Below, piece by piece: positions 42,494 through 59,738 of a stretch of DNA of 64,000 bases; the first letter of the stretch is position 1; every line of letters starts with the position of its first letter. Both the position numbers and the translations under genes were made by a program. Under the pieces are notes generated by a model that had not been told where the DNA came from, ran no database searches, and saw nothing but the letters and a program-made list of their open reading frames with translations. The stretch covers positions 1 to 64,000 of IMG/VR virus record IMGVR_UViG_3300036766_000194. The stretch is one strand, 5' to 3'.

Positions 42494-42886
42494 ATGATGA
42501 CACATGCCGACTACGAAGCGCAACGCGCACTGCTCTATGACGACTACGAGGCGCAATGCGCACCGCTTTATGCCGACCACAAGGCGCAACTCGCACTGCT
42601 CGATGACGACCACTACGAAGCGAAACACGCACTCGATGACGACTACGAGACGCAACTCGCACTGCTCGATGACGACTACAAGGCGCAACGCGCACTCGAT
42701 GACGACTACGAGACGCAACTCGCACTGCTCGATGACGACTACGAAGCGAAACACGCACTGCTCTATGACGACTACAAGGCGCAACGCGCACCGATCGATG
42801 CCGACTACGAAGCGAAACGCGCACTGCTCGATGACGACTACGAGGCGCAACGATCAGTAATCGAAAATCCGTTCAAAGTTTCATGA
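42494..42886 (+). CDS. Acidic 11-aa (33-bp) tandem-repeat protein
   Basis: RBS aaggag. About 11 units of DYEAQRALLDD with point variants and 10/12-aa indel units. Confidence 0.8.
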   Translation: MMTHADYEAQRALLYDDYEAQCAPLYADHKAQLALLDDDHYEAKHALDDDYETQLALLDDDYKAQRALDDDYETQLALLDDDYEAKHALLYDDYKAQRAPIDADYEAKRALLDDDYEAQRSVIENPFKVS

Positions 42887-46161: not shown

Positions 46162-46209
46162 AAAAATGGCGGGCGTCTGAAAAACAGACCAACCCGCCAT
46201 TTGCGTTTT
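46162..46209. terminator. Bidirectional terminator between convergent units
   Basis: aaatggcggg...cccgccattt 10-bp stem with A/T flanks. Confidence 0.8.
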
Positions 46210-47164
46210 AAGAGACTTGTTCTTTGATCCATCTGTAGGTCGGGATAAGACCATCAGCAAGTAAGGTCTTGGGTTCCCATCCGAGGACTTGGCGGAGGAG
46301 ACTATTGTCACTGTTGCGCCCACGTACCCCTTGGGGCTTGGTAAGATCGTGCTTCTTCGTCAGGCTCTTTCCCGCGATACCACAAACGAGGTCTACCAGG
46401 CCATCTATTGTAACCAATTCATCAGTTCCCAGGTTGAGAGGTTTTTGGTAGTCGGACGCCATCAAGCGCAGAATACCTTCCACGCAGTCGTTAATGTACA
46501 TGTAAGATCGGGTTGCCTGCCCGTCACCCCATATTTCAATCTCTCCACCGTTTTGTGCTAGAGCCACTTTGCGGCAAATTGCCGCAGGAGACTTTTCCTT
46601 GCCACCTTCATAAGTTCCCAGTGGGCCGTAGACGTTATGAAATCGTACTATGCGGATGTTTAGACCATAGTCCTTAGCGTAGTATTCACACATCTGTTCG
46701 GCAAAGAGTTTCTCCCAGCCGTAGCCGGGTTCCGGGAGTGCCGGATAAGCGTCCTCTTCCTTGAGTGGTGTCACGTTAGCATCGCGCTGTTTGTCTTGGT
46801 TATAGACACAGGCCGAAGAGGTGTAGAGATATTTTCCCACCTTGAAATTCTTGGCTTCTTCCAGCATGTTGACGTTAATCAGAATGTTGTTGCGAGCGAT
46901 ATCGGCCAGGTACTGTGTAATGTAGCCGATTCCACCCATGTCCGCTGCGAGATTATAGACCTCGTCAAAAGTCTCGTCATTGAAAGAGTGAACCGCGTTA
47001 GCCGCATGACGTAGATCATAAATCCAAAAATCATCAGCAACAGTCCGCTCAAACTCGGGATACTTGATGTCAATACCCCGGACAAAGTTTCCCTCAGCCT
47101 TGAGCCGTTTGACAAGATGATGTCCAATGAAACCACCTGCTCCAGTTACAAGAACTTTCTTCAT
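46208..47164 (-). CDS. GDP-mannose 3',5'-epimerase-like SDR
   Basis: GAGGFIG, LAADMGGIG, SSACVY, YGWEK, GGKEKSPAA, RSYMYI.DC, GVRGRNSDN. Confidence 0.88.
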   Translation of the reverse strand: MKKVLVTGAGGFIGHHLVKRLKAEGNFVRGIDIKYPEFERTVADDFWIYDLRHAANAVHSFNDETFDEVYNLAADMGGIGYITQYLADIARNNILINVNMLEEAKNFKVGKYLYTSSACVYNQDKQRDANVTPLKEEDAYPALPEPGYGWEKLFAEQMCEYYAKDYGLNIRIVRFHNVYGPLGTYEGGKEKSPAAICRKVALAQNGGEIEIWGDGQATRSYMYINDCVEGILRLMASDYQKPLNLGTDELVTIDGLVDLVCGIAGKSLTKKHDLTKPQGVRGRNSDNSLLRQVLGWEPKTLLADGLIPTYRWIKEQVS

Positions 47165-48489
47165 TTGTCTTCTCCAACACCTAAAGGCCAATACTTAATC
47201 CCATTACACTCTGCAAGATTAGGTAATACACGCCAACAATCAACAACGATGCGGTCGGTTCCCGAACCGTCACGACGTTGCTCGGCAGTACGTGCCCAAG
47301 CGGTTGGTTCAAGAGCAATTACTTCAGGATAGGGAAGCATCACAATGACCAAATCAGTTTCTTCAATACATTGACGCAAATCAGTCATTCTTTTCACACC
47401 TCTTAGTATAGGACTAGAAAACAAGGGATCATAAACATAGAGGTCAACATATTTTTCATGAAGCGCAAGCATCATTTTCCAACCTGCCGATTCTTCAATG
47501 ACTTCGGATCCTATTTTGTAAGTTAATCCTATGATAGCTACTCGACGTCCTAGTGCTCGACTCATCACTCTTTTTACTAGTGAATCAACACGGTGAATAT
47601 TACTATTATGAACTTCTCTAGGAACAGAGACATCAACACCTAAAGATTCTCCCAGAGCCTTTAATGCAACATTGTCTCTCGGGAAACAGGGACCACCGAA
47701 GGCGACGCCACCCTTGAGGTATTTTATCCCGATACGACTATCGGCTCCAATTGCCGCCGCAACCACATCAACGTTGGCTCCCGATAATTTGTCACAAAAA
47801 TCAGCCAGCATGTTCGCATACGCGATTTTTGTAGTCACGAACGTGTTGACGGCAATCTTCGTCAACTCAGCCTCGACGGGCTTCATAAGAGCGATTATGG
47901 GAAAACTGTTAACAAATGTGCCATAGAATGTCTTCAGCGTGTCCCCGACACGGGAGTCGTCTGTTCCAATGAGGAGCAAGTCGGGGTTGTGTAAATCGTG
48001 AATCACGGACCCGAGTGCGATAAATTCCGGATTGTACGCAACACCGAAATCAACACCGTGTTTCTTTCCACTGGCGTGCTCAAGTGCCGCTGTGACCTCT
48101 GCTGTCTGACCAGGCATGACCGTGCTTGTCAAGATGATAGTGTGGTATGTGCTCTTTTGTGAGATGGCCGCACCGATACTTTCGCAAACGGGGAGCACAT
48201 ATTTAAGGGAAAATTTGCCATCTTCTTGTGAAGGCGTGGCGACAATGATGAAGGTCATATCGGTGTTGATAATTGCAGAACCCGTGTCAGTGGTGGCTGA
48301 GAGACGATTGGGTGGTAAAGAGCTTATAAGCTCTTCGAGTCCCGGTTCGCCGACGGGAGCATGACCGGAGTTAACGGTGTCACACTTGCTTGCATCGAGG
48401 TCCACGCCAATCAACATGTGGCCCGCCGCCGCGAAAACTGCACACATTGGAGAACCAAGTTTGCCGAGACCGATTACAGAAATTTTCAT
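47161..48489 (-). CDS. UDP-glucose/GDP-mannose dehydrogenase
   Basis: GLGKLG, IVATP, STVMPG, YNPEFIALG, AELTK.A.N, GGPCFPRD. Confidence 0.92.
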   Translation of the reverse strand: MKISVIGLGKLGSPMCAVFAAAGHMLIGVDLDASKCDTVNSGHAPVGEPGLEELISSLPPNRLSATTDTGSAIINTDMTFIIVATPSQEDGKFSLKYVLPVCESIGAAISQKSTYHTIILTSTVMPGQTAEVTAALEHASGKKHGVDFGVAYNPEFIALGSVIHDLHNPDLLLIGTDDSRVGDTLKTFYGTFVNSFPIIALMKPVEAELTKIAVNTFVTTKIAYANMLADFCDKLSGANVDVVAAAIGADSRIGIKYLKGGVAFGGPCFPRDNVALKALGESLGVDVSVPREVHNSNIHRVDSLVKRVMSRALGRRVAIIGLTYKIGSEVIEESAGWKMMLALHEKYVDLYVYDPLFSSPILRGVKRMTDLRQCIEETDLVIVMLPYPEVIALEPTAWARTAEQRRDGSGTDRIVVDCWRVLPNLAECNGIKYWPLGVGEDK

Positions 48490-49256
48490 ATTGGCTCCGC
48501 TGTAATTAATAGATGCCAACCCAAAAATCGTTCAAGGATATGGAAGAGAACATTAGGCATCCAGCGGTAGTACCAGCATTTCACATATCGATGTTGAATG
48601 TAATCCGAAATCTTCCAAGGGAAAATATGGGTCTTACGAATCTCCGTGACCTTGAATCCCGCCTCATTTAACAGATCCTTAACTTCCTCCTTCGTCCATA
48701 CAGTAGCAATCGGACATCCAGCCTGAGCTTCCGGTTGTTGCATAGTAAGGTTCTTGATGCTCCACTTGGCATACAACATGATTTTAATCGTTGTGCCTTT
48801 GTGACAATATTTTCGCATTTCTTTAAGAACAGCTTCAGGATTAGGTGTGTGGTGAATGACACCAAACGAATAGATCAAATCGTAAGGTTCAACCGGGACG
48901 TACTTGGATAATTCTTCTGCATTGAGTTGGTAGAACGTGATCCAATCTTGAAGACTATAGACTTGCGAACGTTGGATTGAGAGCTTGAGAGATTCGTCGG
49001 ACAGATCAACGGCAGTGACCTTGCAGCCATACCGGGCGAAATTCATCGTATCGGTGCCAATTCCACATCCAACCTCTAAGACTTTGGAATCTTTGTGTTG
49101 AAAGAAATCTGCAAAGCCGGGTATGTGCGGTTCTACAAAATATTTTCGTTGCTCAACTTCATCAAAATATTGCCTGCTGCCAACGGGAGCTGTAGAGTGC
49201 CGTAGATTGCACGGCCTGGCATCCCAAAAATATCTAATAGTTTCAATTGTTGTCAT
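48486..49256 (-). CDS. Class I SAM-dependent methyltransferase
   Basis: VLEVGCGIGTD, DLIYSFGVIHHTP. Confidence 0.9.
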   Translation of the reverse strand: MTTIETIRYFWDARPCNLRHSTAPVGSRQYFDEVEQRKYFVEPHIPGFADFFQHKDSKVLEVGCGIGTDTMNFARYGCKVTAVDLSDESLKLSIQRSQVYSLQDWITFYQLNAEELSKYVPVEPYDLIYSFGVIHHTPNPEAVLKEMRKYCHKGTTIKIMLYAKWSIKNLTMQQPEAQAGCPIATVWTKEEVKDLLNEAGFKVTEIRKTHIFPWKISDYIQHRYVKCWYYRWMPNVLFHILERFLGWHLLITAEPI

Positions 49257-49302
49257 CGCAACCCCTGATATCATTTTGGGTTGCGTAAAGCCTTTTAGAT
49301 GA

Positions 49303-50442
49303 TTAAATATCAGATTGTGTGGGGATAAAGAATTTTCCTTCATAGTTATACTTGAAACGTTCCATGATTTCCTGAGCATAATTCCATGAGAAGATGCAAG
49401 TGTAATCAGGTCGCGCTTCTAACCAATTCTTTGGATATAGAACCTCAGTTCTGGTTCCTGGAATAAATTTTTGAAATTTAGCCGGGGCATCATCTGCAAC
49501 TGCTTCAATCAAAGTGTGATCAATGTTGCAATAATTCATCATGACGGTTGCCTTAGCCGCCGCACCGAAACCCCATACTCGTTTGCCTTTTTCTTTTAAT
49601 TTAAGTAGGGTACTTTTTAGTTTGACGGCGATTTCATCTACTTGTTGTTGAAGTGTTGGCACTCCTTCTAGCCCCCACTCTTCAAACTGACAAGAAGTCC
49701 CGTTCTTGCTTGCTGTAATGCGCAGAGAACCCCCTTGTGATTCTAGATGCTCCACTTCTTGAATGTGAAGTCCATTTCGACCGAATAGGATGGCTAGAGA
49801 TTTGAAAGAAAAATAGAAAACATGCTCATGATAGATGGTGTCAAAATTGCCCTTACTTATTAAATCTCCAAAATAGGGAACTTCCACGATACAAACCCCG
49901 TCGGGCTTCAAAACTTCTGCGATTCCTGCAACAAAGTCATTGGTGCTGGGTACATGAGCTAAGACATTGTTAGCGTGAATCACATCGGCTTTGGGAAGTT
50001 GCTTCGCCAATTTCAGGGAGAAGAAATCTTGTACAGTGGGAATTCCTTTTAGGGCAGCTTCGTTAGCAGGTCCTCGCGCCGGATCTATTCCCAAGACCTG
50101 AATTCCTAACCCGTCATAGAACTGTAGTAAATAGCCGTCATTGCTTGCGATTTCTATCACCAAGGCATCTTCAGAGAGAGTTTTGCTAACCCGTTCTACC
50201 AAAGTTCGTGCCGCATTGACAACAGAATTGGACACTGTAGAATAGTAGAGATACTCCACAAACATCTTTTCAGGTAGCACAACGTCTCGTAATTGTCCTA
50301 GCGAACATGATAAACAATACATTACTTCTAGAGGATAGCACTCAAATGGAGAATCGGCGGTAGTCAGCAATTCGTTGGCAAGAGGCTGTTTCTTCAAGGA
50401 AAGAACTAGTTCAGTTGGCGCTCCACAACTTCTACAATTCAT
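49303..50442 (-). CDS. NDP-hexose C-methyltransferase
   Basis: CRSC/CLSC zinc module, EIASNDG, NNVLAH, YHEH, GAAAK. Confidence 0.9.
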   Translation of the reverse strand: MNCRSCGAPTELVLSLKKQPLANELLTTADSPFECYPLEVMYCLSCSLGQLRDVVLPEKMFVEYLYYSTVSNSVVNAARTLVERVSKTLSEDALVIEIASNDGYLLQFYDGLGIQVLGIDPARGPANEAALKGIPTVQDFFSLKLAKQLPKADVIHANNVLAHVPSTNDFVAGIAEVLKPDGVCIVEVPYFGDLISKGNFDTIYHEHVFYFSFKSLAILFGRNGLHIQEVEHLESQGGSLRITASKNGTSCQFEEWGLEGVPTLQQQVDEIAVKLKSTLLKLKEKGKRVWGFGAAAKATVMMNYCNIDHTLIEAVADDAPAKFQKFIPGTRTEVLYPKNWLEARPDYTCIFSWNYAQEIMERFKYNYEGKFFIPTQSDI

Positions 50443-51377
50443 AGACTTAACCCCTCAAGCATTTTGATGTTATAGTATTTTGGACTATCCCAATCGGAAA
50501 AACTCTCAACATTTGCCACCAATTCCTCCACTATCTGTTCCACCTTTTGTTGAGGATGGAATGACAAAATTGCTTTTGCTTTTGCCGTAGAAATCTTGTA
50601 ATTTCTAAGATCGGGACCCGATTTTGTTTTGACATTAACTTGGAGTATATCCGCAACTATTTTTCCAACTTTTCCCACCGTGTAGTTTTCAGAGGCAATG
50701 TTGAATGCTCCAGAAATAGCAAGATCGGCCTCTGTTGCTTTGATATATGCTTGAGTTGCATCGGAGATGCTTAGAATGGGTCTCCAAACCTCGGGGTTAA
50801 CAACCGTGATAGCCTTATCTTTCAGAGCTGATTTTACCATCGCATTCACAATAAGATCTAAACGCATGCGAGGACTATACCCACACACCGTTCCCATGCG
50901 GAATGCGATTACAGAAAAGATTTCATCTTGTAAGTGCAAAACTCCTTGCTCCCCAAGAAGTTTAGACATTGCGTAGGGGTGAGAACAAGAAGGGGAAAAA
51001 GTCTCTCTACACGATTCGTTTAGGGGAGCTTCATAGACTGAACAAGTGCTGGCATAGATAAATCGTTTAACCCCAGCCCGTTTGGCACAATATGCAAGAT
51101 AACTAGGAGCTGCCGCATTGAAGATGAAATTCTTTGCAGGCAAGATTTCAGCAGTAGGAACACTAGAAACTCCGGCCACAAAGATCACTTGATCGTACTG
51201 TTCTAGATCAGACTCTACTAGTTTGAAAACATCATTTTGGATTAGTTTAACGCTTGTGGGTAGGTAATTTCCAAACCAAAGTAGGTCTATGACATCTACG
51301 TCATATCCATGTTCCAACAAGGCTGGCACAAGCCGTGAACCAAGATATCCCGCTCCACCTGCAACTAGAATCTTCAT
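50439..51377 (-). CDS. NAD-dependent epimerase/dehydratase (SDR)
   Basis: GGAGYLG, ASTCSVY, YAMSK, GYSPRMRLDL..N. Confidence 0.9.
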   Translation of the reverse strand: MKILVAGGAGYLGSRLVPALLEHGYDVDVIDLLWFGNYLPTSVKLIQNDVFKLVESDLEQYDQVIFVAGVSSVPTAEILPAKNFIFNAAAPSYLAYCAKRAGVKRFIYASTCSVYEAPLNESCRETFSPSCSHPYAMSKLLGEQGVLHLQDEIFSVIAFRMGTVCGYSPRMRLDLIVNAMVKSALKDKAITVVNPEVWRPILSISDATQAYIKATEADLAISGAFNIASENYTVGKVGKIVADILQVNVKTKSGPDLRNYKISTAKAKAILSFHPQQKVEQIVEELVANVESFSDWDSPKYYNIKMLEGLSL

Positions 51378-51415: not shown

Positions 51416-51568
51416 TTAGAGATTTTCTAACTTTCCTGTACGCATCTTACGACCCCAATTGTCTTTAGCACATTCATCGCAAAGGACAATAACACTATCG
51501 TCGTAGCACCGTTCTTGGACGGTTTTGTCTTGCTTGGCGCAATATTGGCACATCAGTTCTTCAGACAT
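51416..51568 (-). CDS. Small zinc-finger-like protein
   Basis: CQYC...LCDEC. Confidence 0.5.
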   Translation of the reverse strand: MSEELMCQYCAKQDKTVQERCYDDSVIVLCDECAKDNWGRKMRTGKLENL

Positions 51569-52505
51569 TATGTGTTCTAAGACGAGCAGCCTGTTCAATG
51601 GCATTCACTCTATTTATGTATGTATGTTTTGCCGCAACTTCATCCATTAATTCATGCAAATCCTTGAGTGGAATTTGAGGCAGCTGTTCTTTTGCTGTAT
51701 AGAATAATTGGCGTGAATCTGAGTTGAAGATTAGACGGTCTTCAAAAACTGCATTAACATGTTTGGATGTTGTCACTCCATATTGACCATACGAGATATT
51801 CTTAAAGATTCGGCAAGGCGCATATCCTTGCATCTGAGAATTCGCGGGAATCGTTGGCGCGATATACGATTCCTGGACTAGTCTGATATTTTCTTCCAGA
51901 GTAACAGGAGGAGTACCAGAATAACCGCCTATAGCTCGGAACTCAATACCATTCTTTTGGCATTCATCAGCAAAAGGTGGAACGGTGCCACCGTTGTGTC
52001 GGGGTTCGTAAGTACCCACCCAATTGACCACTTTGCTTTCACTACGAAACACCCGATTGGGTTTGAGTGCTTCTATCTCGTGTGGAAGTAGATCAGTTGC
52101 CCATTGTATTTCCACCCCGTTTGGCGGGACAAAATAGGTGTTGATTGCAAGTTTGACGCAACCAGGCACACGGAGTTCACGATGTGTTCGTTCTTCTTCG
52201 TAATAATAGCACCAGAAATGGAGTTGAGGACAGTCTACAAGATATTCTCGGCACTTCGGGTCACCACCGTTGTAGTTAACATAAAGACAATCTTTACGCC
52301 GGGGGATATTAAGACATACATCATTTTCAGTTAGGAAGAGAGTGTTGGAAAAGTCAGAACCGTCATCTTCGTCAAGCCAGCGCACGTTCTTTCCCATGAA
52401 CTGAAGCGCCCTGTAGAACCCCGCGTGGATATAGGTGTGAGTATGCCAGTTATTCTTGAACCCCCAGATCACCCAGTTACAAGTGTCAAGGTTGAATTCA
52501 TTCAT
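51561..52505 (-). CDS. Putative glycosyltransferase
   Basis: HTH.YIH, WATDLLP.EI, PCRIFKNISYG, HTYINR; located in the sugar operon. Confidence 0.55.
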   Translation of the reverse strand: MNEFNLDTCNWVIWGFKNNWHTHTYIHAGFYRALQFMGKNVRWLDEDDGSDFSNTLFLTENDVCLNIPRRKDCLYVNYNGGDPKCREYLVDCPQLHFWCYYYEEERTHRELRVPGCVKLAINTYFVPPNGVEIQWATDLLPHEIEALKPNRVFRSESKVVNWVGTYEPRHNGGTVPPFADECQKNGIEFRAIGGYSGTPPVTLEENIRLVQESYIAPTIPANSQMQGYAPCRIFKNISYGQYGVTTSKHVNAVFEDRLIFNSDSRQLFYTAKEQLPQIPLKDLHELMDEVAAKHTYINRVNAIEQAARLRTHNV

Positions 52506-53028
52506 GTGTCCACCAATCTTCAAAAGGAGTACGATTTTGATTCGGTCCCCAAGCTGGAGCAAGAACATCTGGCTTGATTAAGGTATAACCCGCACCAGAT
52601 AGAAGTTCCCGTTCTTTACGTTTAATTTCAGGTTCGTTATCGTGTTCTATCGTGATGACGTGAAATGAAAATCCAGCTTCTAATAATGCTTTCATAATGT
52701 CAGGTTCTTCGTCCATTAGGTCTAATGAAAGAAAGTCAATGATGCTGCCCAAGCCTGCTGCGGTTAATTCAGTTTTCCAATCAATGGTTAGCGCGTTTTC
52801 GCAAATGGCGTGGGTTATCCGCGAAGTGTTAAATTTTGCAACAATTTCAGGATTGTAGTCTACGCCAACCCCATGCCAACCGATTAGTTCCAAGCCATAA
52901 GTATTGTTGCAATCAAAAGGATCACCACAACCAATGTCTAAGAATGTTCCAGTGGAAAGTTTATGAGCCTTCGCCCAATCGTAGGCAAAACGGTCTTGTT
53001 CAACTTCTCCAAATGCTTTGTAGTTCAT
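52498..53028 (-). CDS. FkbM-like methyltransferase
   Basis: FLDIGC.DP...NNTY.LE..GW.G, IDFLSLD, ITIEHD. Confidence 0.75.
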   Translation of the reverse strand: MNYKAFGEVEQDRFAYDWAKAHKLSTGTFLDIGCGDPFDCNNTYGLELIGWHGVGVDYNPEIVAKFNTSRITHAICENALTIDWKTELTAAGLGSIIDFLSLDLMDEEPDIMKALLEAGFSFHVITIEHDNEPEIKRKERELLSGAGYTLIKPDVLAPAWGPNQNRTPFEDWWTHE

Positions 53029-53831
53029 AAAGCTAAAACTTTCTTCAGCCATATAGTTTTTTTGGCATGATAGTCATTTGATTGATGATTCCAATTAGAA
53101 CCGCTCACATAGTGTAGAATGGTAGGTGTGGTTTCTAACCAGTATTTCATGTAATTAGCAGGGGCAAAATCTACTTGAGGGTCATCGTAAATGCGTTCTT
53201 CTTTGACGTGAAGTCTAGTTAATTCTGGATGTGCTCTTAGATAGCAAAAGGTCTGACCACCTACATCTACTGGGATGCCTTCGGCTTTTCCACACCACCA
53301 ATTAATGCTTTCTGGTTCTGGAATTTGGCTTAAATCAGCTAAGAAAAAACCGCTATGCATATGTTCTGCACTTCTACCTACCGGAGTGTTGGAACTCTGT
53401 GGAACATAGATTATTTGATACTTTTGCAGATAATCTGTCAAACGGACAGGAGTCATCAGAAACATATCTGATTCAATAAACAATATCGGACCTTTTTCTT
53501 TTACAATGTAATTGTCCCAAGCCCAAGCGAGCGGATATGCGCAAGCAATACACGCATTGTAATATTCACCTGCTGAGGTAAATAGGGGGCAGGCTTCAAA
53601 ACTTTGGTAGTGATCTACTGTGGTTTGTTCTTTAATAACATCAATCATTGGAAGTCCCAGCCGTTCACACTCTGAGCGAATTTGTTTGGCGATTTGTTTA
53701 TCGTTGAGATCAAAGTGTGCGTTGTTAAGAATGGTGAGTATAAAATCTTCTTGCAGATGTTTTTGAAAGGACTTTAGTTGTAATTCGATAAAATCCGGTC
53801 GCTTATGTGAGGAAGTATAGATCTTTAGCAT
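53025..53831 (-). CDS. Putative GT-A fold glycosyltransferase
   Basis: RPDFIELQ, FIESDMF, DVGG, LHY..GSNW. Confidence 0.5.
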   Translation of the reverse strand: MLKIYTSSHKRPDFIELQLKSFQKHLQEDFILTILNNAHFDLNDKQIAKQIRSECERLGLPMIDVIKEQTTVDHYQSFEACPLFTSAGEYYNACIACAYPLAWAWDNYIVKEKGPILFIESDMFLMTPVRLTDYLQKYQIIYVPQSSNTPVGRSAEHMHSGFFLADLSQIPEPESINWWCGKAEGIPVDVGGQTFCYLRAHPELTRLHVKEERIYDDPQVDFAPANYMKYWLETTPTILHYVSGSNWNHQSNDYHAKKTIWLKKVLAL

Positions 53832-53840
53832 CTTTGGTTC

Positions 53841-54506
53841 CTATTCGGTCAAACCCAATGAACGTAGTTTATTTCTCACATCCCAATACAAAGAGTTGCT
53901 TGTGGGCCATTCGGCATGGAACTCAACTTGCATTTGTTTGATATGATTTTTTAAAACTTCTGGTCCGGTGCTCATAATCACTTCGTGCTCTGCCCCTTCT
54001 ATATCCATTTTTACAAAATCCCAAATGGTGTCACCAAGAGCATCTGTAAGAGACACACAAGGTACCATAGTTGCGTCTGATATACCGCTTGTTTGAATTA
54101 GCCCATTACGACAAAAGTGTCCTCTTTCTGACTTGTGCCCACCACCTTGAAATTTTATTTCTCCTGTATATGTCCATATGGCCGCGTTGATGGCACTGAC
54201 CTTTAGACCAGTTTGCGTAAGCATATCGGTCAAGATTTTATAAGTTATAGGATCAGCTTCATAAGCAGTAACTTTAGCCCCATTAAGCGCCCAATACGCA
54301 GTAAGCAGCCCTGCGTTCGCCCCAATATCCAGGACGTTAGCTCCTGAAAATGGTTTGAAGTGTTGTTCATTATCGAGTATAAGAGTTTCTACGGACCATG
54401 GATTGTCTAAAGAGTCATGTTCATGTGTAAATTCAGGATGTTCCGAAGCCATTCGCGACCAGATCCTTAAACATGCTTCTTTGTGGGTTTCTTCTCTATC
54501 CTTCAT
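53841..54506 (-). CDS. FkbM-family methyltransferase
   Basis: VLDIGANAG, AYEAD, VKMDIEGAE, VEFH. Confidence 0.88.
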   Translation of the reverse strand: MKDREETHKEACLRIWSRMASEHPEFTHEHDSLDNPWSVETLILDNEQHFKPFSGANVLDIGANAGLLTAYWALNGAKVTAYEADPITYKILTDMLTQTGLKVSAINAAIWTYTGEIKFQGGGHKSERGHFCRNGLIQTSGISDATMVPCVSLTDALGDTIWDFVKMDIEGAEHEVIMSTGPEVLKNHIKQMQVEFHAEWPTSNSLYWDVRNKLRSLGLTE

Positions 54507-55866
54507 TGTTACCTTCTACATAAAATATTGTCTCTGTACATGCAGTGCCCCAAGCCTCGCCAACAATCGTCTCTTCTGTGTAACTTTGAAAATGCTTTGT
54601 CAAATCTTCTTTACGGAAAGAGAAAATCGGAATTCCAAATTCATCAAAACTTAGCAGCTGCGTTGTTTCTGCAAACGGGGTACAGATCACAATCGCGAGT
54701 TTCTTGCAAGATATCAATGCGTTTTTCAAGATAGCTTCCCACTCAAAATTATGTTCTAACACGTGGCGCAGAAGAATACCATAAGTGTTGGATTTGTGTT
54801 TTGCCAAGTCAGCGACTATATCGCAATAATCAGGTGTTCCATCCACCCCGGTATACTTATTTGTGACAAGTTTTTTCGCGTAAACTGTTCCGCAACCCCA
54901 ATCTTCCACTGGTCCGTGATCAATAAATGCTACAGATTTTCTATAGGTTTCTTCAACCCCATAGCACTCACCACCCATAGTGTCTTTTCTCGCCCCCATC
55001 CATCTGTTAAGCATGCTACGTTCCTCGGTAGGCCAGAGATCTGTGTGTAGGGTTCGCATTCTAGAAATCAATTCCTGTCGCTTTTTAGTTGCTTCTTGAA
55101 GCATAGACCCAGGCTTTTCTCGATAGTGAAAAAGACATTCAGGAAGAATTTTAATCTTATAACCTCGTTTCATAATGTCAAGCCAGAGATTCCAATCCTC
55201 ATAACCCGTTAAGTGCTTGTTATAACCACTTAAAGCCGGATTGTAGCCCCCAACTTCTTTCAACACTCCACGTTTAATCAAGGAGCAACAGGGAATATGA
55301 TTGTCTTCCATTAGCTGTTCAATAGTAGGTACCCATGTTTGCCACGTATAATCCCTAACACCAAACACAGCGGCCCAAGTTCCTACAACAGCCACGCGGT
55401 CTTTCATCAAGGGTACTACCTTACTCAGGTAATTTGATTCAATCCAATCATCGGCGTCAAGCGGGAGAATGAATTCGTGGAGTTCGGTAGAAGAAGCGTT
55501 GATCCCCGCATTTCGTGCTAAGGCAAGACCCATATTATTTTGTTTGAGGATTTTCATTTTTGGTGACCAATGAAGTTTCTCAGCAGCAGTTTGAGCTTCT
55601 TTTAAAGTCATGGGATTATCTTTATTTTTTTCTTCTCTATATTGTTGAGTGTAGTGAATTATCAGGGCATCAATAGTAGCCTGATAAACATATTCTATCT
55701 TTTTTAAATGAGACATGGCAACTTCGTAGGAATTATCAGTAGAACCATCATCAATGACAATTACTTCAACATTGGGATAGTCTTGACCGAGGGCTGATTC
55801 GATAGCCTGTGACAAATACTGTGCTTGATTGTAACAGGGAATGATAATAGATACCTTGTCTGACAT
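54496..55866 (-). CDS. GT2 glycosyltransferase fused to a methyltransferase-like C-terminal domain
   Basis: IIIPCYN, DDGSTD, LDADD, EDW. Tail VEDWGCG...RHVLEHN. Confidence 0.85.
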   Translation of the reverse strand: MSDKVSIIIPCYNQAQYLSQAIESALGQDYPNVEVIVIDDGSTDNSYEVAMSHLKKIEYVYQATIDALIIHYTQQYREEKNKDNPMTLKEAQTAAEKLHWSPKMKILKQNNMGLALARNAGINASSTELHEFILPLDADDWIESNYLSKVVPLMKDRVAVVGTWAAVFGVRDYTWQTWVPTIEQLMEDNHIPCCSLIKRGVLKEVGGYNPALSGYNKHLTGYEDWNLWLDIMKRGYKIKILPECLFHYREKPGSMLQEATKKRQELISRMRTLHTDLWPTEERSMLNRWMGARKDTMGGECYGVEETYRKSVAFIDHGPVEDWGCGTVYAKKLVTNKYTGVDGTPDYCDIVADLAKHKSNTYGILLRHVLEHNFEWEAILKNALISCKKLAIVICTPFAETTQLLSFDEFGIPIFSFRKEDLTKHFQSYTEETIVGEAWGTACTETIFYVEGNNEG

Positions 55867-56547
55867 TTATCGTTGTCCTCTCTTTTCTAATACCATAAAA
55901 ATGGGTTTGTATTGAGAAGCAGGCCAGCCGTAATTTCCTGTGTAACTCTCAGGATAGCAAAATGAAGGTGAAAGTACAAGAGCCGGAGGATGGTCAAATA
56001 AATAACGATTCAGATGGCTTTCATCATGCCAAACTGCGACAATGCCCTTGGCTTTGTCTGAGTCTACTCCTTGGCGAATCACTTCTGCCATCTTTAAATA
56101 GGCTTCGCTTGTTCCGCCGTTAAATCCCCCACAAAAGTATGTACACAGATGAGGTAGATAGGCAGCAGACTCAGGATTTCTTTCGGGTGAACCTTGCTGA
56201 TTTTGTACATGATATCCAGAATGAACCGTGGCTGTAATACCTTCTGAGAATATGTCTTCTTCTTCTACCGGAGCAACAAACAATGCGTCAGCATCGCCAT
56301 AAAAGATGTTATCGTATTTTGATAGTAAGTCTCGTTGGGATAGTACAATGTGGTAACGATAGAGTGTGGCATCCGGATAGCCTAGCGGCTCCTGTGTAAA
56401 CTGATAACACACATCAAAGGGTTCTTCTCTGTCCGTGAACAAGATAACGTCATGGGGCACAAAGAATTTCTTTGCTGAGGCAATTAGATCCTCTGCAAAT
56501 TTCCAGTATCGTGGTCTAGTTGCTATGATTATCAGAGCTGTACTCAT
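55867..56547 (-). CDS. GT6 (ABO-type) glycosyltransferase
   Basis: IIAT..Y, SAKKFF, LFTD, DAD, YFCGGFNGG, WHDESHLNRY. Confidence 0.88.
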   Translation of the reverse strand: MSTALIIIATRPRYWKFAEDLIASAKKFFVPHDVILFTDREEPFDVCYQFTQEPLGYPDATLYRYHIVLSQRDLLSKYDNIFYGDADALFVAPVEEEDIFSEGITATVHSGYHVQNQQGSPERNPESAAYLPHLCTYFCGGFNGGTSEAYLKMAEVIRQGVDSDKAKGIVAVWHDESHLNRYLFDHPPALVLSPSFCYPESYTGNYGWPASQYKPIFMVLEKRGQR

Positions 56548-57401
56548 AGCTTCAACCATCTTTCGGGAATAATGTCCATAGGGTCCGCCTCATCTGACCC
56601 GGCTACGAACCATGCTTTGGGCGCAATGATGATACGTTGTCCTAAAGTTTCTTTGGGCGATAGCCACGCGCCCCACCAAGAAAAGGTACTATTAGCAAGA
56701 ATACCATGATCACACAGACTCATCAAATACAAATCTTCCACCTCCCGTCCTTCATTGTTGCGGTGGATAATTCCGCTACTATCACAGATTCCGCTCATTG
56801 GATTACAATCAATCACGGTTGCATCTCTGTATTTCATGTTTTGTTTACACCAAGCAGCCTCGTCTGAGAACAGATAAAAATGGACATTTGAAATTTGTCC
56901 CCGGATAAGGTCCATTGCCGTTTTGTAATAGTTTTCGCCTAACTCTCCATGGAATACTCTGGCCCGTTGTGAAAGATTATCAGAACGTCTTATATGTAGG
57001 AAAGCTGATGGCCCTTGTTTGATCTTTTCTGCCACCTGTCTCGTTTCTTCGCTAAGTGGCATTCCTCGGAAAACTTCTGAACGAATTTTGTGTTGAACAC
57101 GTTTGAAGTATTGTTCACATTGCCAATATCCTTGTAGGAAAAGATCATTATCCATACCAAACTCTAGAATCTCTGGTTTGAAGCGAAGACTTCCTTCAAC
57201 AAATTTTGGACTCTCACACCGATGAACTAATTGTAAATTTGTTAATCCGAGTTTATCCAGCAGATAAACACGACCCATGTCATTATCAATCGCTGACATG
57301 TCATACTGAATGTCACCCGGCGCATTAATTTCCAATGAACGTCCAAGTGCATATTGGAACAATTGATTTCCAAGGCCTCCAGATAGTCCTATAGTTAACA
57401 T
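56544..57401 (-). CDS. GT11 alpha-1,2-fucosyltransferase
   Basis: GGLGNQLFQYA, GYWQ, LHIRR.D, FSDE..W, NSTFSWWGAWL. Confidence 0.92.
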   Translation of the reverse strand: MLTIGLSGGLGNQLFQYALGRSLEINAPGDIQYDMSAIDNDMGRVYLLDKLGLTNLQLVHRCESPKFVEGSLRFKPEILEFGMDNDLFLQGYWQCEQYFKRVQHKIRSEVFRGMPLSEETRQVAEKIKQGPSAFLHIRRSDNLSQRARVFHGELGENYYKTAMDLIRGQISNVHFYLFSDEAAWCKQNMKYRDATVIDCNPMSGICDSSGIIHRNNEGREVEDLYLMSLCDHGILANSTFSWWGAWLSPKETLGQRIIIAPKAWFVAGSDEADPMDIIPERWLKL

Positions 57402-57982
57402 ATGTTTCTCAAATCTTTAACTTGTGTGATTAGAATCGGGTTATTTGACTTATAGAAATTATAGCTTTGCACGATGTAGTCTGGAATTTCCTTGAAAAAG
57501 ATTCCTTCATTACCTAGAGTTTGACCTACCCATCTGTCTTCGGCCCAGTCGTTGATGGCAGCATCAATTAGGATCTTCATAGAACGTTCTGACAGCCAGT
57601 ATCCACCACCACTGGCATAATCAAATTTTATAGTACCAAGGGGAAGAGGAGGAATATTTAAATTGGGCATTCCCATGTCATTTTTGGGTATCCATATTCC
57701 CGCATAATCTTCATGAATAATTTTAAATCGTTCAACATTCAGGTAGGCATCATCGTCTAGTTTTAACAATCGTTTGTAACCGTGATCCAAAGCCCACTGA
57801 CATAAAGTCCTAACTTTTAAAGGGAGGGACATGTAGTCGTCGGGAACATTCAGTCTTTCACCATCAAATACTTCAACAGTATATCCGTATGCCTGCGCTT
57901 TAGGAATCCAGGTATCCTGTTGCGCCTGAACTCGGTGGGCATATTTCTTACAACTTACGATAGCAATAAGAGTATCACTCAC
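57395..57982 (-). CDS. GT31/Fringe-like glycosyltransferase
   Basis: DDYMSLPLK, LKLDDDAY, YASGGGYWLS, AEDRWVG. Confidence 0.7.
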   Translation of the reverse strand: MSDTLIAIVSCKKYAHRVQAQQDTWIPKAQAYGYTVEVFDGERLNVPDDYMSLPLKVRTLCQWALDHGYKRLLKLDDDAYLNVERFKIIHEDYAGIWIPKNDMGMPNLNIPPLPLGTIKFDYASGGGYWLSERSMKILIDAAINDWAEDRWVGQTLGNEGIFFKEIPDYIVQSYNFYKSNNPILITQVKDLRNIC

Positions 57983-58625
57983 CTAATAGTCCTGCGACCG
58001 TCGCCCAGGGAACAGGAGCATATTCTCTTCCTAACGATTTTTTACAGGCATTATTAGGATGAACTGACGCCACTATCAAGGTAGGATCATTAAGATCACA
58101 CCTTGATTCCTGAGGGATCTGTTTAAGAATGTTATAGTCTGCCCCTGCCAAAATACTATCAAAACGATTCCCTTCCCAATAAGATTTGCGTACCGCGATA
58201 CTCGCCATCCAACCGATAGTAGAAGGAGAAGTGTATTGAAAAGCTCTCTTATCTGGTGTGTAGTAGTACAGTGTGGTGGATCCGGTTATTTGGATAGAAG
58301 GATTTTCTATAAATGGAAGAATCTGACGAGAGATTCTGTTGGCAGCGTAAACGTCATCATCATCCCAGACTATCCCTATTTCTCCATTAGAAAGTTCAAA
58401 ACAACGATTCATTTTCTCCCCATGATTTCTCTTAGGAAGTTCATAGAAGTATTTAATTCGAGAATCGTCTGGAAGTAGATTTTTTATTGAGTCAGTGCCA
58501 TCATCAAGGATTACAAGTTCCACATACCAATCAGTAGGATATTGTTGGGATAAAAAACAAGAAATTGAACGAGGCACGAACTCTCGACGATTATAGGTTG
58601 GCATCAACGCTGATACAGTTACCAT
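57975..58625 (-). CDS. GT2 glycosyltransferase
   Basis: LMPTYNR, ILDDG, WDDDDVY...RI..Q. Confidence 0.88.
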   Translation of the reverse strand: MVTVSALMPTYNRREFVPRSISCFLSQQYPTDWYVELVILDDGTDSIKNLLPDDSRIKYFYELPKRNHGEKMNRCFELSNGEIGIVWDDDDVYAANRISRQILPFIENPSIQITGSTTLYYYTPDKRAFQYTSPSTIGWMASIAVRKSYWEGNRFDSILAGADYNILKQIPQESRCDLNDPTLIVASVHPNNACKKSLGREYAPVPWATVAGLLGE

Positions 58626-58672
58626 TCAATCACCCTCTTAACACATAGGATAGTATAAATACTCTTAAAATG

Positions 58673-58696
58673 AAAAAGCCTCCTATTGTAGGAGGC
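58673..58696 (-). terminator. Rho-independent terminator
   Basis: Minus strand gcctcctacaataggaggc followed by ttttt. Confidence 0.8.
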
Positions 58697-58721
58697 CTCT
58701 TCAAGAAATATTTATCCGGTT

Positions 58722-59123
58722 TTAGTTGGACATCACAACTGTTGCCATTGGGAGGTTCTCGAAGCAGGTAAGCGTCAAGGATCTGACATAGCTTGTGACA
58801 TTTGCTGGAGATCCAATAGCGTTATTGGCTACAAGGTTCATCCAGTAGATGAGTGCCACACCGCCATCAGCAGAAATTTCATAGGTGTTGGAGTTGGTAG
58901 TCGAACTAAGTATGGTTGCGTGAGTGCTCGGAGACGCGTTTGCCAGGACAACGAACTGAAAAATGTTGTTGTTGATAGAGATGGTTGGACACCCAACAAC
59001 GTACTGGTGGGCCTCAGCGGGGGATCCCGAAGTGTTAGCATTTTCGGCTATGTATTCGTTAACCAGTGCCGCACCGCCTGATGCAGAGATGTTAAAAAGT
59101 TTTCCAATGAATCCGTTTGCCAT
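58722..59123 (-). CDS. Hypothetical protein
   Basis: RBS aggag, downstream terminator. Confidence 0.7.
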   Translation of the reverse strand: MANGFIGKLFNISASGGAALVNEYIAENANTSGSPAEAHQYVVGCPTISINNNIFQFVVLANASPSTHATILSSTTNSNTYEISADGGVALIYWMNLVANNAIGSPANVTSYVRSLTLTCFENLPMATVVMSN

Positions 59124-59178
59124 GTATTTTCTCCTGGCGGTAATTTCCGCTCATTATGAAGTCTAGTATTAAGTGATT

Positions 59179-59541
59179 ATGGACGCAAACACCCTATGTC
59201 AAAAATTATATTCTTCTAAGTTTAACTTTTCCAATGAGTTAGAGCTACAACTTGGGATAGAACAACTTTTAATTTCTCTCCCCGTTCATTATCAAAAAGA
59301 AGTAATCTTCTCTCCAGAGGATAGAATAGACTTTTTAGTCGTTCTTGATACTGAAGTAAAAGTGGGGATAGAAGTCAAGGTAGACGGTTCATTAATTTCG
59401 GTGACTAGACAACTGTGGAGATATTCTCAGTCATCATTGGCCGATGTTCTGGTTTTAGTAACAACTCGAACCAAACATAGACATCAGCCTGTGGAAATAA
59501 ATGGGAAAACCATATTTGTCGTGGTCTTATGCTCCTTATGA
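59179..59541 (+). CDS. Small PD-(D/E)XK nuclease-like protein
   Basis: E...Q..I, DRIDF...IEVK, QLWRY. ATG 14 nt after AGTATTAA. Confidence 0.7.
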   Translation: MDANTLCQKLYSSKFNFSNELELQLGIEQLLISLPVHYQKEVIFSPEDRIDFLVVLDTEVKVGIEVKVDGSLISVTRQLWRYSQSSLADVLVLVTTRTKHRHQPVEINGKTIFVVVLCSL

Positions 59542-59697
59542 AAATCATAGATCTATCAGGACAACAATAAAGGCTACACAAAAGAAAACTGCACTGTTTG
59601 CTGTAAAACTTGCAACTATGCCAAAGGGAATCGTTATACCTTTGAAGAATGGGTTGCAATGACAAAAGCACTTCGAAAAGTAAGATCCAAGTTTTGA
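59538..59697 (+). pseudogene. Internally deleted HNH endonuclease remnant
   Basis: MKIIDLSGQ start joined out of frame to DNNKGYTKENCTVCCKTCNYAKG. Confidence 0.65.
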
Positions 59698-59738
59698 GCA
59701 GTATAAAGGAAGTCAGGATTTCAGGACCTTTGCAAATC

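What the first reader, a model, noticed from the sequence alone, without database searches (positions are those of the whole stretch)
55867..57982. GT31-like, GT11, GT6 in the order of ABO blood-group antigen synthesis
Seen: three overlapping genes transcribed GT31-like, then GT11, then GT6. The GT6 has a DAD motif. Established: beta-1,3-galactosylation, alpha-1,2-fucosylation and GT6 alpha-1,3 transfer build H and then A/B antigens. Most bacterial GT6 have NXN, while vertebrate and some phage GT6 have DXD. Inference: the phage builds a blood-group-like branched glycan, further methylated by the adjacent FkbM enzymes, probably as a virion shield or receptor mask.
Basis: partly seen in the sequence, partly recalled or inferred. 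Interest (0 to 1): 0.66.

Follow-up and report, generated by a model that had tools for sequence, protein, structure and literature searches.

The report
Phage blood-group-like glycan gene module
A 300-kb phage from sediment carries three adjacent sugar-transferase genes of the same families that build human H and A/B blood-group sugars; they form a recurring phage module inside a larger sugar-chain operon, and what the sugar chain is attached to is unknown.

Summary
On the minus strand, three overlapping genes encode a minimal GT31-like transferase (57982-57395), a GT11 fucosyltransferase-like enzyme (57401-56544) and a GT6 (56559-55867) with a DAD motif.

They are the middle of a roughly 12.4-kb, 14-gene, one-strand operon (58625-46208). 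It holds at least 7 glycosyltransferases, 4-5 methyltransferases and 3 nucleotide-sugar enzymes, all soluble. The genome is a complete 299,875-bp phage record with no tyrosine integrase.

The link between the three genes is real:
- GT11 lies within 6 kb of the GT6 in 61 of 80 related viral loci.
- The GT31-like gene accompanies the GT6 in 19 viral loci and in 0 of 80 bacterial loci.
- In 8 loci (5 different proteins) it is fused to the GT6 in one reading frame.

The GT6 residues match fucosylated-acceptor, GalNAc-type enzymes. An A/H-like cap is therefore plausible but unproven.

- Gene order is not conserved in relatives.
- DXD is the norm for this phage clade.
- FkbM is not part of the conserved module.

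The target of the glycan (virion, host envelope or DNA) is unresolved. GT6 and GT11 in cyanophages have been known since 2005. This is a new variant of a known kind, of moderate interest.

The parts
57395..57982 (-). GT31-like minimal GT-A glycosyltransferase (195 aa, GTG start). DDD motif at 57749-57757; EDRW(VG) motif at 57530-57541.
   Evidence: Pfam Fringe 22.1 bits against a cut-off of 21. AlphaFold2 mean pLDDT 96. Foldseek top hits are all GT31 enzymes. In a 48-sequence alignment D76 is nearly invariant and D78 invariant; D149 and G153 are invariant and E148 nearly invariant.
56544..57401 (-). GT11 alpha-1,2-fucosyltransferase-like enzyme (285 aa). HIRRSD motif at 56979-56996; STFSWW at 56673-56690.
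   Evidence: PF01531 E 1e-23. phrog_2644 E 4e-46. Motif positions. Homologue next to or near the GT6 in 61 of 80 viral loci.
55867..56559 (-). GT6 of the minimal DXD (phage/Parachlamydia) clade, 230 aa. DAD at 56287-56295, WHDES at 56017-56031, donor-pocket Cys-Gly-Gly at 56125-56133, His113, Gly115, Val223, Lys226.
   Evidence: PF03414 E 1e-22. BoGT6a E 2e-34 and human GTA about 3e-22. Residue mapping.
57975..58625 (-). GT2 glycosyltransferase (216 aa), first gene of the operon.
   Evidence: PF00535 E 6e-15. Conserved at the same place in the close relatives L166 and L167.
54496..55866 (-). GT2 glycosyltransferase (456 aa) with an extra C-terminal domain of unknown kind. That domain carries a possible SAM-binding motif.
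   Evidence: PF00535 E 1e-30. The C-terminal 176 aa are unrelated to GT6.
53841..54506 (-). FkbM-family methyltransferase (221 aa).
   Evidence: PF05050 E 8e-12. TIGR01444 82 bits against a cut-off of 37.7. Not found in the 80 viral loci.
53025..53831 (-). Unnamed GT-A-like glycosyltransferase candidate (268 aa).
   Evidence: No Pfam hit. The Atlas model resembles viral GT2- and GT92-like clusters, TM 0.69-0.80. Found in 12 of 80 viral loci.
52498..53052 (-). Unnamed 184-aa protein with a SAM-methyltransferase-like motif I.
   Evidence: Sequence. No family hit. Homologues in L166 and L167.
51561..52568 (-). Unnamed GT-B-like glycosyltransferase candidate. The probable true start is Met22, at 52505.
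   Evidence: Atlas search: viral clusters, some carrying PF13524; TM 0.83-0.87. Found in 19 of 80 viral and 13 of 80 bacterial GT6 loci.
50439..51377 (-). SDR nucleotide-sugar epimerase/reductase. GalE is the best named match.
   Evidence: PF01370 E 9e-29. TIGR01179 77 bits, below its cut-off.
49303..50442 (-). NDP-sugar C-methyltransferase-like protein (379 aa).
   Evidence: PF08421, PF13489 and PF08484.
48486..49379 (-). Class I SAM methyltransferase (297 aa).
   Evidence: PF13489 and PF13847. In L166 and L167 its homologue lies between GT11 and GT6.
47161..48519 (-). Nucleotide-sugar 6-dehydrogenase (452 aa).
   Evidence: TIGR03026 314 bits against a cut-off of 190. PF03721, PF00984 and PF03720.
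46208..47191 (-). Fcl-like SDR (327 aa), the likely maker of the GDP-6-deoxyhexose donor for the GT11. Last gene of the operon.
   Evidence: Best NCBIfam match is GDP-L-fucose synthase NF047922, E 5e-40 but 138 bits against a cut-off of 500. Homologues in 47 of 80 viral loci. 49% identical to the gene placed before GT11-GT6 in cyanophage S-8S56.
58670..58700 (-). Terminator-like hairpin followed by a T run. It separates the small gene 59123-58722 from the operon start.
   Evidence: Read directly from the sequence.

Best explanation
**What it is.** The three genes are a conserved phage glycan-capping module inside a self-contained, all-soluble glycan-assembly operon (58625-46208, minus strand) of a probably virulent 300-kb phage.

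**Proposed steps.**
1. The GT31-like enzyme, which has the DDD motif of metal-dependent inverting GT-A enzymes, adds a beta-1,3-linked hexose, most simply Gal, to a growing chain.
2. The GT11 adds an alpha-1,2-linked L-fucose or a close GDP-6-deoxyhexose. The operon's Fcl-like reductase finishes that donor from a host-made GDP-4-keto intermediate.
3. The metal-dependent DXD GT6 adds an alpha-1,3-linked HexNAc, probably GalNAc, to the fucosylated galactose. The product is a branched A/H-like cap.
4. The other glycosyltransferases build the chain beneath the cap, and the methyltransferases decorate it.

**What is shown and what is inferred.**
- Shown: the family memberships, intact catalytic motifs, co-occurrence and fusion of the three genes, and the absence of membrane proteins.
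- Inferred: every sugar, every linkage and the order of the steps.

**Target.** My leaning, at about 0.4, is that the chain is built in the cytoplasm on a phage protein, that is, virion glycosylation as in mycobacteriophages and chloroviruses. The reason is that the phage encodes no initiating lipid-carrier transferase, flippase, polymerase or ligase.
For: **Families and motifs:**

**The three genes belong together.**
- A GT11 homologue lies within 6 kb in 61 of 80 viral GT6 loci, and an Fcl-like gene in 47 of 80.
- All three genes occur in 18 loci, which are 18 of the 19 loci whose GT6 is closest to the window's.
- Their GT6 sequences fall in one clade with support 0.90.
- GT31::GT6 fusion reading frames occur in 8 loci, 5 different proteins, in both domain orders.
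- The GT31-like profile finds 19 strong viral loci and 0 of 80 bacterial loci.

**Specificity residues of the GT6.**
- His113, Gly115 and Val223 correspond to H233, G235 and A343 of human GTA and to H122, G124 and I228 of BoGT6a. These are the residues said to admit the 2'-fucose; the alpha-3-galactosyltransferase has Gln, Trp and Trp instead (PMC3516806).
- The donor pocket Cys-Gly-Gly corresponds to Leu266-Gly267-Gly268 of GTA.
- PaGT6, of the same clade, is a metal-dependent GalNAc transferase that needs the fucosylated acceptor (PMC3516806).

**Soluble and self-contained.**
- No hydrophobic segment in any operon protein.
- No ORF with more than 5 such segments in the whole genome.
- No PF02397 or PF00953 initiating transferase.
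- No tyrosine integrase.
Against: - No enzyme activity or glycan has been measured.
- GT31 enzymes also transfer GlcNAc, GalNAc or Glc, so Gal is only one option.
- The His-Gly-small-residue signature is found in nearly all prokaryotic and phage GT6, whether or not a GT11 gene is nearby. It therefore has no discriminating power here.
- The closest NCBIfam model is named 'family 6 glucosyltransferase' and is matched below its cut-off.
- The phage has no GDP-mannose 4,6-dehydratase, and the Fcl-like protein scores far below the Fcl cut-off.
- In the closest relatives methyltransferase genes lie between GT11 and GT6. The acceptor of the GT6 could therefore be a methylated sugar.
- Nothing links the operon to structural genes.
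- Soluble transferases are also normal for lipid-linked O-unit assembly in bacteria.
Confidence: 0.45

Rival explanations
1. Same enzymology, different target. During infection the module extends or caps host lipid-linked envelope glycans (lipopolysaccharide O-units, capsule or exopolysaccharide). This changes the cell surface and so blocks superinfection or stops progeny from sticking to infected cells and debris. It is the 'LPS cluster' idea proposed for cyanophage P-SSM2.
For: - P-SSM2 carries GT11 and GT6 in one of its two 'LPS' clusters, and its authors proposed cell-surface alteration (PMC1079782).
- Bacterial GT6 and GT11 of E. coli O86 and Bacteroides act on O-antigen units (PMC3516806; own knowledge for O86).
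- Soluble transferases acting at the inner face of the membrane are usual in such pathways.
- Homologues of several operon genes also lie next to the GT6 in bacterial genomes.
Against: - The phage encodes no initiating transferase, flippase, polymerase or ligase. It would therefore need a host acceptor and host export machinery that tolerate a chain extended by 7 or more foreign transferases.
- The phage clade lacks the C-terminal membrane-binding domain of the bacterial NXN enzymes (PMC3516806; the window's GT6 is 230 aa).
- The GT31-like partner is absent from all 80 bacterial GT6 loci.
Confidence: 0.3
2. The three enzymes cooperate, but the product is not A/B/H-like. For example, the GT31-like enzyme adds GlcNAc or Glc, the GT11 adds another GDP-6-deoxyhexose (possibly C- or O-methylated), and the GT6 adds glucose. 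The resemblance to the ABO pathway then stops at the family level.
For: - GT31 holds several donor specificities; the top structural match is B3GNT2, a GlcNAc transferase.
- The nearest NCBIfam model is named glucosyltransferase.
- A sugar C-methyltransferase and 3-4 other methyltransferases are in the operon.
- Methyltransferase genes separate GT11 from GT6 in the closest relatives.
- The Fcl-like protein is divergent.
- Ser replaces the Pro of the conserved His-Pro-Gly next to the donor site.
Against: - All GT6 enzymes assayed so far, as cited in the papers read here, transfer Gal or GalNAc in alpha-1,3 linkage. Those with His, Gly and a small residue at the acceptor positions need the 2'-fucose (PMC3516806, PMC3961637).
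- The GT11 motifs are intact.
- The tight GT11-GT6 linkage is what a fucose-dependent GT6 would predict.
Confidence: 0.35
3. The operon hypermodifies the phage's own DNA. A first transferase glycosylates 5-hydroxymethylcytosine and the others, including the trio, extend it to a branched glycan that blocks host nucleases.
For: - The genome encodes a divergent thymidylate-synthase-family protein with Asp at the position of E. coli ThyA Asn177. That change is typical of dCMP hydroxymethylases (own knowledge). A NUDIX hydrolase gene lies next to it.
- Phage GT-A and GT-B enzymes are known to put mono- and disaccharides on 5hmC (bioRxiv 10.1101/2023.12.21.572611).
- The GT-B-like protein at 51561-52568 has a weak Atlas lead to T4 glucosyltransferase.
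Against: - The thymidylate-synthase-like gene lies about 55 kb from the operon.
- Its homologue is present in only 1 of 5 trio-bearing phage records and is absent from the 99%-complete one.
- Cyanophages with GT11-GT6 clusters are not known to contain 5hmC (own knowledge).
- No Tet/JBP enzyme was found, although that search had no positive control.
- GT6 and GT11 are known only to act on sugar acceptors.
- Homologues of the module occur in bacterial genomes.
Confidence: 0.07

Closest known systems
GT6 'clade 1': minimal catalytic domain with DXD (cyanophage P-SSM2 GT6, its marine metagenome homologues, Parachlamydia acanthamoebae PaGT6)
   Same: - About 230 aa, with no stem, transmembrane or C-terminal membrane-binding domain.
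- DXD motif, WHDES catalytic Glu and the C-terminal Lys are present.
- 39% identical to the P-SSM2 and P-SSM5 GT6.
- Lies in a glycan gene cluster that also holds a GT11.
   Different: - It belongs to a separate, mostly viral subclade.
- The GT6 of that subclade travels with, and is sometimes fused to, a GT31-like enzyme. That enzyme is absent from the cyanophage clusters examined and from the bacterial loci.
- Ser replaces the Pro of the His-Pro-Gly motif.
Human ABO transferases GTA/GTB with FUT1/FUT2 (GT11) and beta-3-galactosyltransferases (GT31)
   Same: - The same three CAZy families.
- The GT6 catalytic and acceptor residues align (E about 3e-22).
- The donor pocket is GTA-like, with Gly at the position of residue 268.
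   Different: - Soluble single-domain proteins encoded in one operon, not Golgi type II membrane proteins.
- The GT31-like enzyme is a 195-aa minimal version.
- The source is sediment, so there is no immune context.
- The product is unverified.
Bacterial blood-group mimics: E. coli O86 O-antigen genes (WbnI GT6, WbnK GT11, WbnJ beta-1,3-GalT) and Bacteroides ovatus GT6a
   Same: A prokaryote-world gene cluster that combines a beta-1,3 transferase, a GT11 and a GT6. BoGT6a is the best PDB match (E 2e-34).
   Different: - Those GT6 enzymes have NXN, are metal-independent and carry a membrane-binding tail (PMC3516806, PMC3961637).
- The O86 beta-1,3-GalT is a GT2 enzyme, not GT31 (own knowledge).
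- Those clusters sit with wzx/wzy-type O-antigen processing genes. The phage has no polytopic membrane protein.
Virus-encoded cytoplasmic glycosylation of virions: mycobacteriophage capsid and tail-tube glycans; chlorovirus PBCV-1 capsid glycans
   Same: - Soluble virus-encoded transferases together with methyltransferases and nucleotide-sugar enzymes.
- The PBCV-1 capsid-glycosylating transferase (2p6w) is among the structural matches of the GT31-like model.
- Virion glycosylation is cited for large aquatic phages in PMC12619734.
   Different: No evidence here that any virion protein is glycosylated, and the operon is not next to recognisable structural genes.

Membership tests
CAZy GT6 (Pfam PF03414) | Significant match to the family model and to solved GT6 structures | tested here: met
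   PF03414 80 bits against a cut-off of 25. BoGT6a E 2e-34 and human GTA about 3e-22.
CAZy GT6 (Pfam PF03414) | Catalytic Glu in the WHDES motif and the conserved C-terminal Lys | tested here: met
   WHDES at residues 177-181. Lys226 aligns with GTA K346.
GT6 minimal metal-dependent clade (P-SSM2/PaGT6 type) | DXD instead of NXN, and no membrane-binding tail | tested here: met
   DAD at residues 89-91. The protein is 230 aa with no hydrophobic segment. 207 of 209 homologues have DxD.
GT6 minimal metal-dependent clade (P-SSM2/PaGT6 type) | Metal-dependent alpha-1,3 transfer of GalNAc or Gal to Fuc-alpha-1,2-Gal acceptors | not testable with these tools
   Only residue signatures are available: His113, Gly115, Val223 and Cys-Gly-Gly. 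The acceptor signature does not discriminate among prokaryotic GT6.
CAZy GT11 (Pfam PF01531) | Family model match and the HxRRxD GDP-fucose-binding motif | tested here: met
   84 bits against a cut-off of 23.9. HIRRSD starts at residue 136 and STFSWW at residue 238. The motif definition is from my own knowledge.
CAZy GT11 (Pfam PF01531) | GDP-L-fucose donor available | tested here: inconclusive
   An Fcl-like SDR is present but scores 138 bits against a cut-off of 500. The genome has no GDP-mannose 4,6-dehydratase. The host would have to supply the intermediate or the finished donor.
CAZy GT31 (Pfam PF01762/PF02434) | Family model match | tested here: inconclusive
   Fringe 22.1 bits against a cut-off of 21; Galactosyl_T 18.9 bits against a cut-off of 23. 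Homologues and fused relatives pass the PF01762 threshold.
CAZy GT31 (Pfam PF01762/PF02434) | GT-A fold closest to GT31 structures, with the beta-3-GT motifs (TW, DDD, EDxxxG) | tested here: met
   The top Foldseek hits are all GT31 enzymes. T24/W25, D76/D78 and E148/D149/G153 are invariant or nearly invariant. The motif definitions are from my own knowledge.
O-antigen type blood-group mimic cluster (E. coli O86 type) | Initiating lipid-carrier transferase and flippase/polymerase genes accompany the transferases | tested here: not met
   No PF02397 or PF00953 match. A crude hydrophobicity scan finds no ORF with more than 5 hydrophobic segments in the genome. The Wzx and Wzy families themselves were not searched by profile.
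Phage DNA-glycosylation systems (5hmC-dependent) | Module linked to a 5hmC-forming enzyme | tested here: not met
   A thymidylate-synthase-like gene with an Asp signature exists about 55 kb away. Its homologue is found in only 1 of 5 trio-bearing phage records.
Virion glycosylation systems (mycobacteriophage/chlorovirus type) | Glycan attached to capsid or tail proteins | not testable with these tools
   There is only indirect support: the machinery is soluble and self-contained.

The most novel reading that the evidence does not exclude
Environmental phages carry, as one mobile and sometimes fused module, all three enzyme families that vertebrates use to make H and A/B antigens (GT31, GT11, GT6). 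They use it to coat their own virions with a methylated A/H-like glycan made entirely in the cytoplasm. Such phage modules, rather than bacterial O-antigen genes, would then be the natural reservoir from which the GT6 enzyme, and perhaps the whole toolkit, reached other lineages. The BoGT6a authors proposed a prokaryotic DXD-type ancestor for the vertebrate GT6 (PMC3516806).
Probability: 0.12. Interest if true: 0.8.

Novelty: new variant of a known kind. Interest (0 to 1): 0.5.

Why it matters
- **Scale.** If the predicted chemistry holds, a widespread group of large environmental phages makes a fucosylated, alpha-1,3-capped glycan with its own soluble enzymes. In this search GT6 homologues were plentiful in viral contigs: 282 confirmed stretches, of which the 80 best were kept. 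Three quarters of those 80 have a GT11 beside them.
- **Enzymes.** The GT31::GT6 fusions and the 195-aa GT31-like enzyme are compact, soluble candidates for making blood-group-type oligosaccharides enzymatically.
- **Phage biology.** The module is a concrete handle on an open question: what do the large 'LPS-like' clusters of virulent phages act on, the virion, the host surface or the DNA?
- **Evolution.** It bears on the proposed prokaryote-to-vertebrate transfer of GT6.

Tried and rejected
- **Megablast of 52000-60000 against GenBank phages:** no match.
- **PDB sequence search with the GT11:** no hit.
- **Complex prediction for GT6 with the GT31-like protein:** Physical association, which the fusions suggest, therefore stays untested.
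- **Do the GT6 acceptor residues track a nearby GT11?** They do not. His-Gly-small residue is near-universal with or without a GT11, so the signature is weak evidence.
- **Is the 209-aa gene upstream of GT11 in the closest relatives the GT31-like gene?** No. A divergent GT31-like copy lies one gene further upstream.
- **Is the C-terminal domain of the 456-aa GT2 a degenerate GT6, as in relative L166?** No similarity.
- **FkbM as part of the conserved module:** rejected, 0 of 80 loci.
- **Host inference from bacterial GT6 hits:** they are at most 46% identical and taxonomically scattered, so I name no host.
- **One PDB search was wasted** on an E-value cut that was too strict.
- **Promoter and terminator consensus scans** inside the operon were no better than shuffled sequence.
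- **Not used:** the big representative-protein search and read laying. The family scans settled the assignments, and only DNA contigs of sediment runs were on offer.
Full report
**1. What is there**

The window is the first 64 kb of a 299,875-bp virus record with direct terminal repeats, judged 100% complete. PHROG matches to helicases, a UvsX-like recombinase and an exonuclease, together with 16 tRNA genes, fit a jumbo phage. No tyrosine integrase was found. Runs from three sediment-metagenome studies hold the DNA.

On the minus strand lies an uninterrupted run of overlapping or abutting genes from 58625 down to 46208. In order of transcription they are:
- GT2 (216 aa)
- GT31-like (195 aa)
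- GT11 (285 aa)
- GT6 (230 aa)
- GT2 with an extra C-terminal domain (456 aa)
- FkbM methyltransferase
- a GT-A-like protein (268 aa)
- a protein with a methyltransferase-like motif (184 aa)
- a GT-B-like protein (335 aa; probable start at Met22)
- a GalE-like SDR
- a sugar C-methyltransferase-like protein
- a class I methyltransferase
- a nucleotide-sugar dehydrogenase
- an Fcl-like SDR

A terminator-like hairpin at about 58700-58670 separates the operon from a small gene upstream that has its own promoter-like site. By tblastn the genome holds no further copy of any of these genes beyond a weak GT2-to-GT2 match inside the operon itself.

**2.

- The GT6 and GT11 assignments are strong: 80 and 84 bits against cut-offs of 25 and 23.9.
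- The GT31 assignment is weak by Pfam for this protein alone: Fringe 22.1 bits against a cut-off of 21. I therefore tested it further.
  - 34 homologues from the word search and 13 from related loci gave a 48-row alignment.
  - The alignment gave an AlphaFold2 model with mean pLDDT 96.
  - Its best PDB matches are exclusively GT31 enzymes: B3GNT2, B3GalT5, B3GalT6, chondroitin synthase, Manic Fringe and C1GalT1.
  - The DDD motif and the EDxxxG motif are invariant or nearly so.
- The DAD motif is residues 89-91 of the GT6 and aligns with the Asn-Ala-Asn of Bacteroides ovatus GT6a.

**3. The three genes belong together**

With the GT6 as query, 282 stretches in the viral contig collection encode a relative, and the 80 best loci were kept. 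I searched their reading frames, 6 kb to each side, with the window's operon proteins.

| Operon protein | Viral loci with a homologue (of 80) |
|---|---|
| GT11 | 61 |
| Fcl-like SDR | 47 |
| 456-aa GT2 | 30 |
| GalE-like SDR | 22 |
| GT31-like | 19 |
| GT-B-like | 19 |
| FkbM | 0 |

- All three genes occur in 18 loci. These are 18 of the 19 loci whose GT6 is most like the window's.
- In a maximum-likelihood tree their GT6 sequences and the window's form one clade with support 0.90: 19 viral tips, one tip from a metagenome-assembled genome, and the window.
- In 8 loci (5 different proteins) the GT31-like and GT6 domains share one reading frame, in either order. In one case a GT2 domain is fused as well. 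Fusion in relatives is classic evidence that two enzymes act on the same substrate.
- A profile of the GT31-like family finds 19 strong viral loci and none of the 80 bacterial or archaeal genome loci that hold a GT6. A GT11 is near the GT6 in only 28 of those 80.
- Cyanophages have the shorter set. In S-8S56 the order is Fcl-like, GT11, GT6, with the Fcl-like protein 49% identical to the window's. In P-SSM2 GT11 and GT6 lie in one cluster. Neither has a GT31-like gene.

**4. Gene order is not informative**

Relatives show GT31-GT6-GT11, GT6-GT11-GT31, GT11-GT6-GT31 and GT31-GT11-GT6. In the two closest relatives (GT6 71-75% identical, one on a 325-kb contig) the operon is syntenic. However, methyltransferase genes lie between GT11 and GT6, and the GT31-like copy is divergent and separated from GT11 by another gene. 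The colinearity with the ABO pathway in this window is probably accidental.

**5. What the GT6 residues say**

The BoGT6a structure paper names the residues that admit the 2'-fucose: His122, Gly124 and Ile228. These are His233, Gly235 and Ala343 in human GTA. In the alpha-3-galactosyltransferase, which uses unfucosylated acceptors, they are Gln, Trp and Trp (PMC3516806).

- By the HMMER alignments the window's GT6 has His113, Gly115 and Val223 at these positions.
- It also has the conserved Tyr141, Trp177 and Glu180, and the C-terminal Lys226.
- At the donor-discriminating positions Leu266/Gly268 of GTA (Met/Ala in GTB) it has Cys143/Gly145. This leaves room for an N-acetyl group.
- The same paper defines a GT6 clade of minimal DXD enzymes (P-SSM2, marine metagenome homologues, Parachlamydia PaGT6). 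It reports that PaGT6 needs Mg2+ or Mn2+, transfers GalNAc to H trisaccharide or 2'-fucosyllactose, and is inactive on LacNAc.

The window's enzyme belongs to that kind, so an A-like reaction is the best guess.

Two cautions apply. First, the His-Gly-small-residue signature is almost universal in prokaryotic and phage GT6 irrespective of a neighbouring GT11, so it does not discriminate. Second, DxD is the rule in this clade, in 207 of 209 homologues, so the motif is not a special feature of this phage.

**6. Donors**

- The Fcl-like SDR has GDP-L-fucose synthase as its best match but scores far below the equivalog cut-off.
- The phage has no GDP-mannose 4,6-dehydratase. The host must therefore provide the 4-keto intermediate or GDP-fucose itself.
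- The GalE-like SDR could supply UDP-Gal or UDP-GalNAc. This is an inference.
- The C-methyltransferase and the other methyltransferases suggest that some sugars are methylated.

**7. What the glycan is attached to**

No operon protein has a hydrophobic segment. No reading frame in the whole genome has more than 5 such segments by a crude scan. No initiating lipid-carrier transferase was found. The machinery is therefore soluble and self-contained. This fits cytoplasmic glycosylation of a phage protein, as in mycobacteriophages and chloroviruses. It is also compatible with extension of host lipid-linked intermediates, the idea proposed for P-SSM2 (PMC1079782).

DNA is a third candidate.
- The genome has a thymidylate-synthase-family protein with Asp at the position of ThyA Asn177, and a NUDIX gene lies beside it. 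From my own knowledge this suggests a dCMP hydroxymethylase.
- Its homologue is present in only 1 of 5 trio-bearing phage records and is absent from the 99%-complete one. The module is therefore not tied to it.

My estimates for the target are: virion or other phage protein 0.4, host envelope 0.3, DNA below 0.1, and the rest unknown.

**8. Prior knowledge and novelty**

- Phage GT6 and its DXD clade were described by 2012 (PMC3516806, PMC3961637).
- The P-SSM2 cluster was published in 2005 (PMC1079782).
- GT6 and GT11 were listed as enriched soil-phage auxiliary genes in 2025 (PMC12016548).
- In six full-text searches I found no paper describing the GT31-like partner, its fusion to GT6, or the trio as a module.
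- 'Moraphages', a recently named lineage of large aquatic phages, have four core glycosyltransferases (PMC12619734). Whether this phage belongs to that lineage was not tested.

I rate this a new variant of a known kind, with interest 0.5.

**9. Limits**

Everything about sugars, linkages and the target is inferred. The complex prediction for the GT31-like protein with the GT6 could not be run. The host is unknown.

Noticed in passing
window 9571-9641 (+): ARAGORN predicts a suppressor tRNA with anticodon TTA, which would read UAA. It sits in a cluster of 10 tRNA genes, and the window holds 16 tRNA genes in all. TAA is nevertheless the commonest stop of long reading frames genome-wide (82 TAA, 43 TAG, 39 TGA), so no recoding is evident.
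   Followed up: partly
G000:C1 about 111,324-112,148 (outside the window; L165:1354-2178): A divergent thymidylate-synthase-family protein has Asp where E. coli ThyA has Asn177, and a NUDIX hydrolase gene lies just upstream. This may be a dCMP hydroxymethylase with a dCTPase, which would mean modified cytosine in the phage DNA. A homologue is present in only 1 of 5 related phage records.
   Followed up: partly
window 58722-59123 (-): A small 133-aa protein, nearly uncharged and rich in Asn, Ser and Thr. It has its own promoter-like site (59234-59205), a strong ribosome-binding site and a terminator hairpin, directly upstream of the glycan operon. In relative L167 a homologue lies at the same place, and the N-terminus of a neighbouring Ice_binding (PF11999) protein is also similar. 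It could be an abundant structural protein or a glycan acceptor. Not tested.
   Followed up: partly
window 59649-63917 (+): A 1422-aa SNF2-type helicase gene is interrupted by intein-like and homing-endonuclease domains: LAGLIDADG_3, Intein_splicing and Hom_end.
   Followed up: no
window 30604-31953 (+): A transposase of PHROG family 506 (E 8e-109), possibly TnpB-like, inside the phage genome, in a region of higher G+C.
   Followed up: no
L166:10682-12061 and L012:7466-9544: Other natural multi-domain transferases occur in relatives. One is a GT2 fused to a second GT6 domain (L166). Another is a 692-aa protein with a GT6 domain, a DXD sugar-binding region and a GT2 domain (L012).
   Followed up: partly
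window 1-1668 (+): Two tandem paralogous reading frames. Positions 1-300 recur at 1016-1315 with 92% identity, and 540-656 recur at 1552-1668 with 82% identity.
   Followed up: no
window 42278-42853 (-): A reading frame of about 190 aa with 5 hydrophobic segments, one of only two such proteins in the genome, next to a tRNA-Met gene.
   Followed up: no
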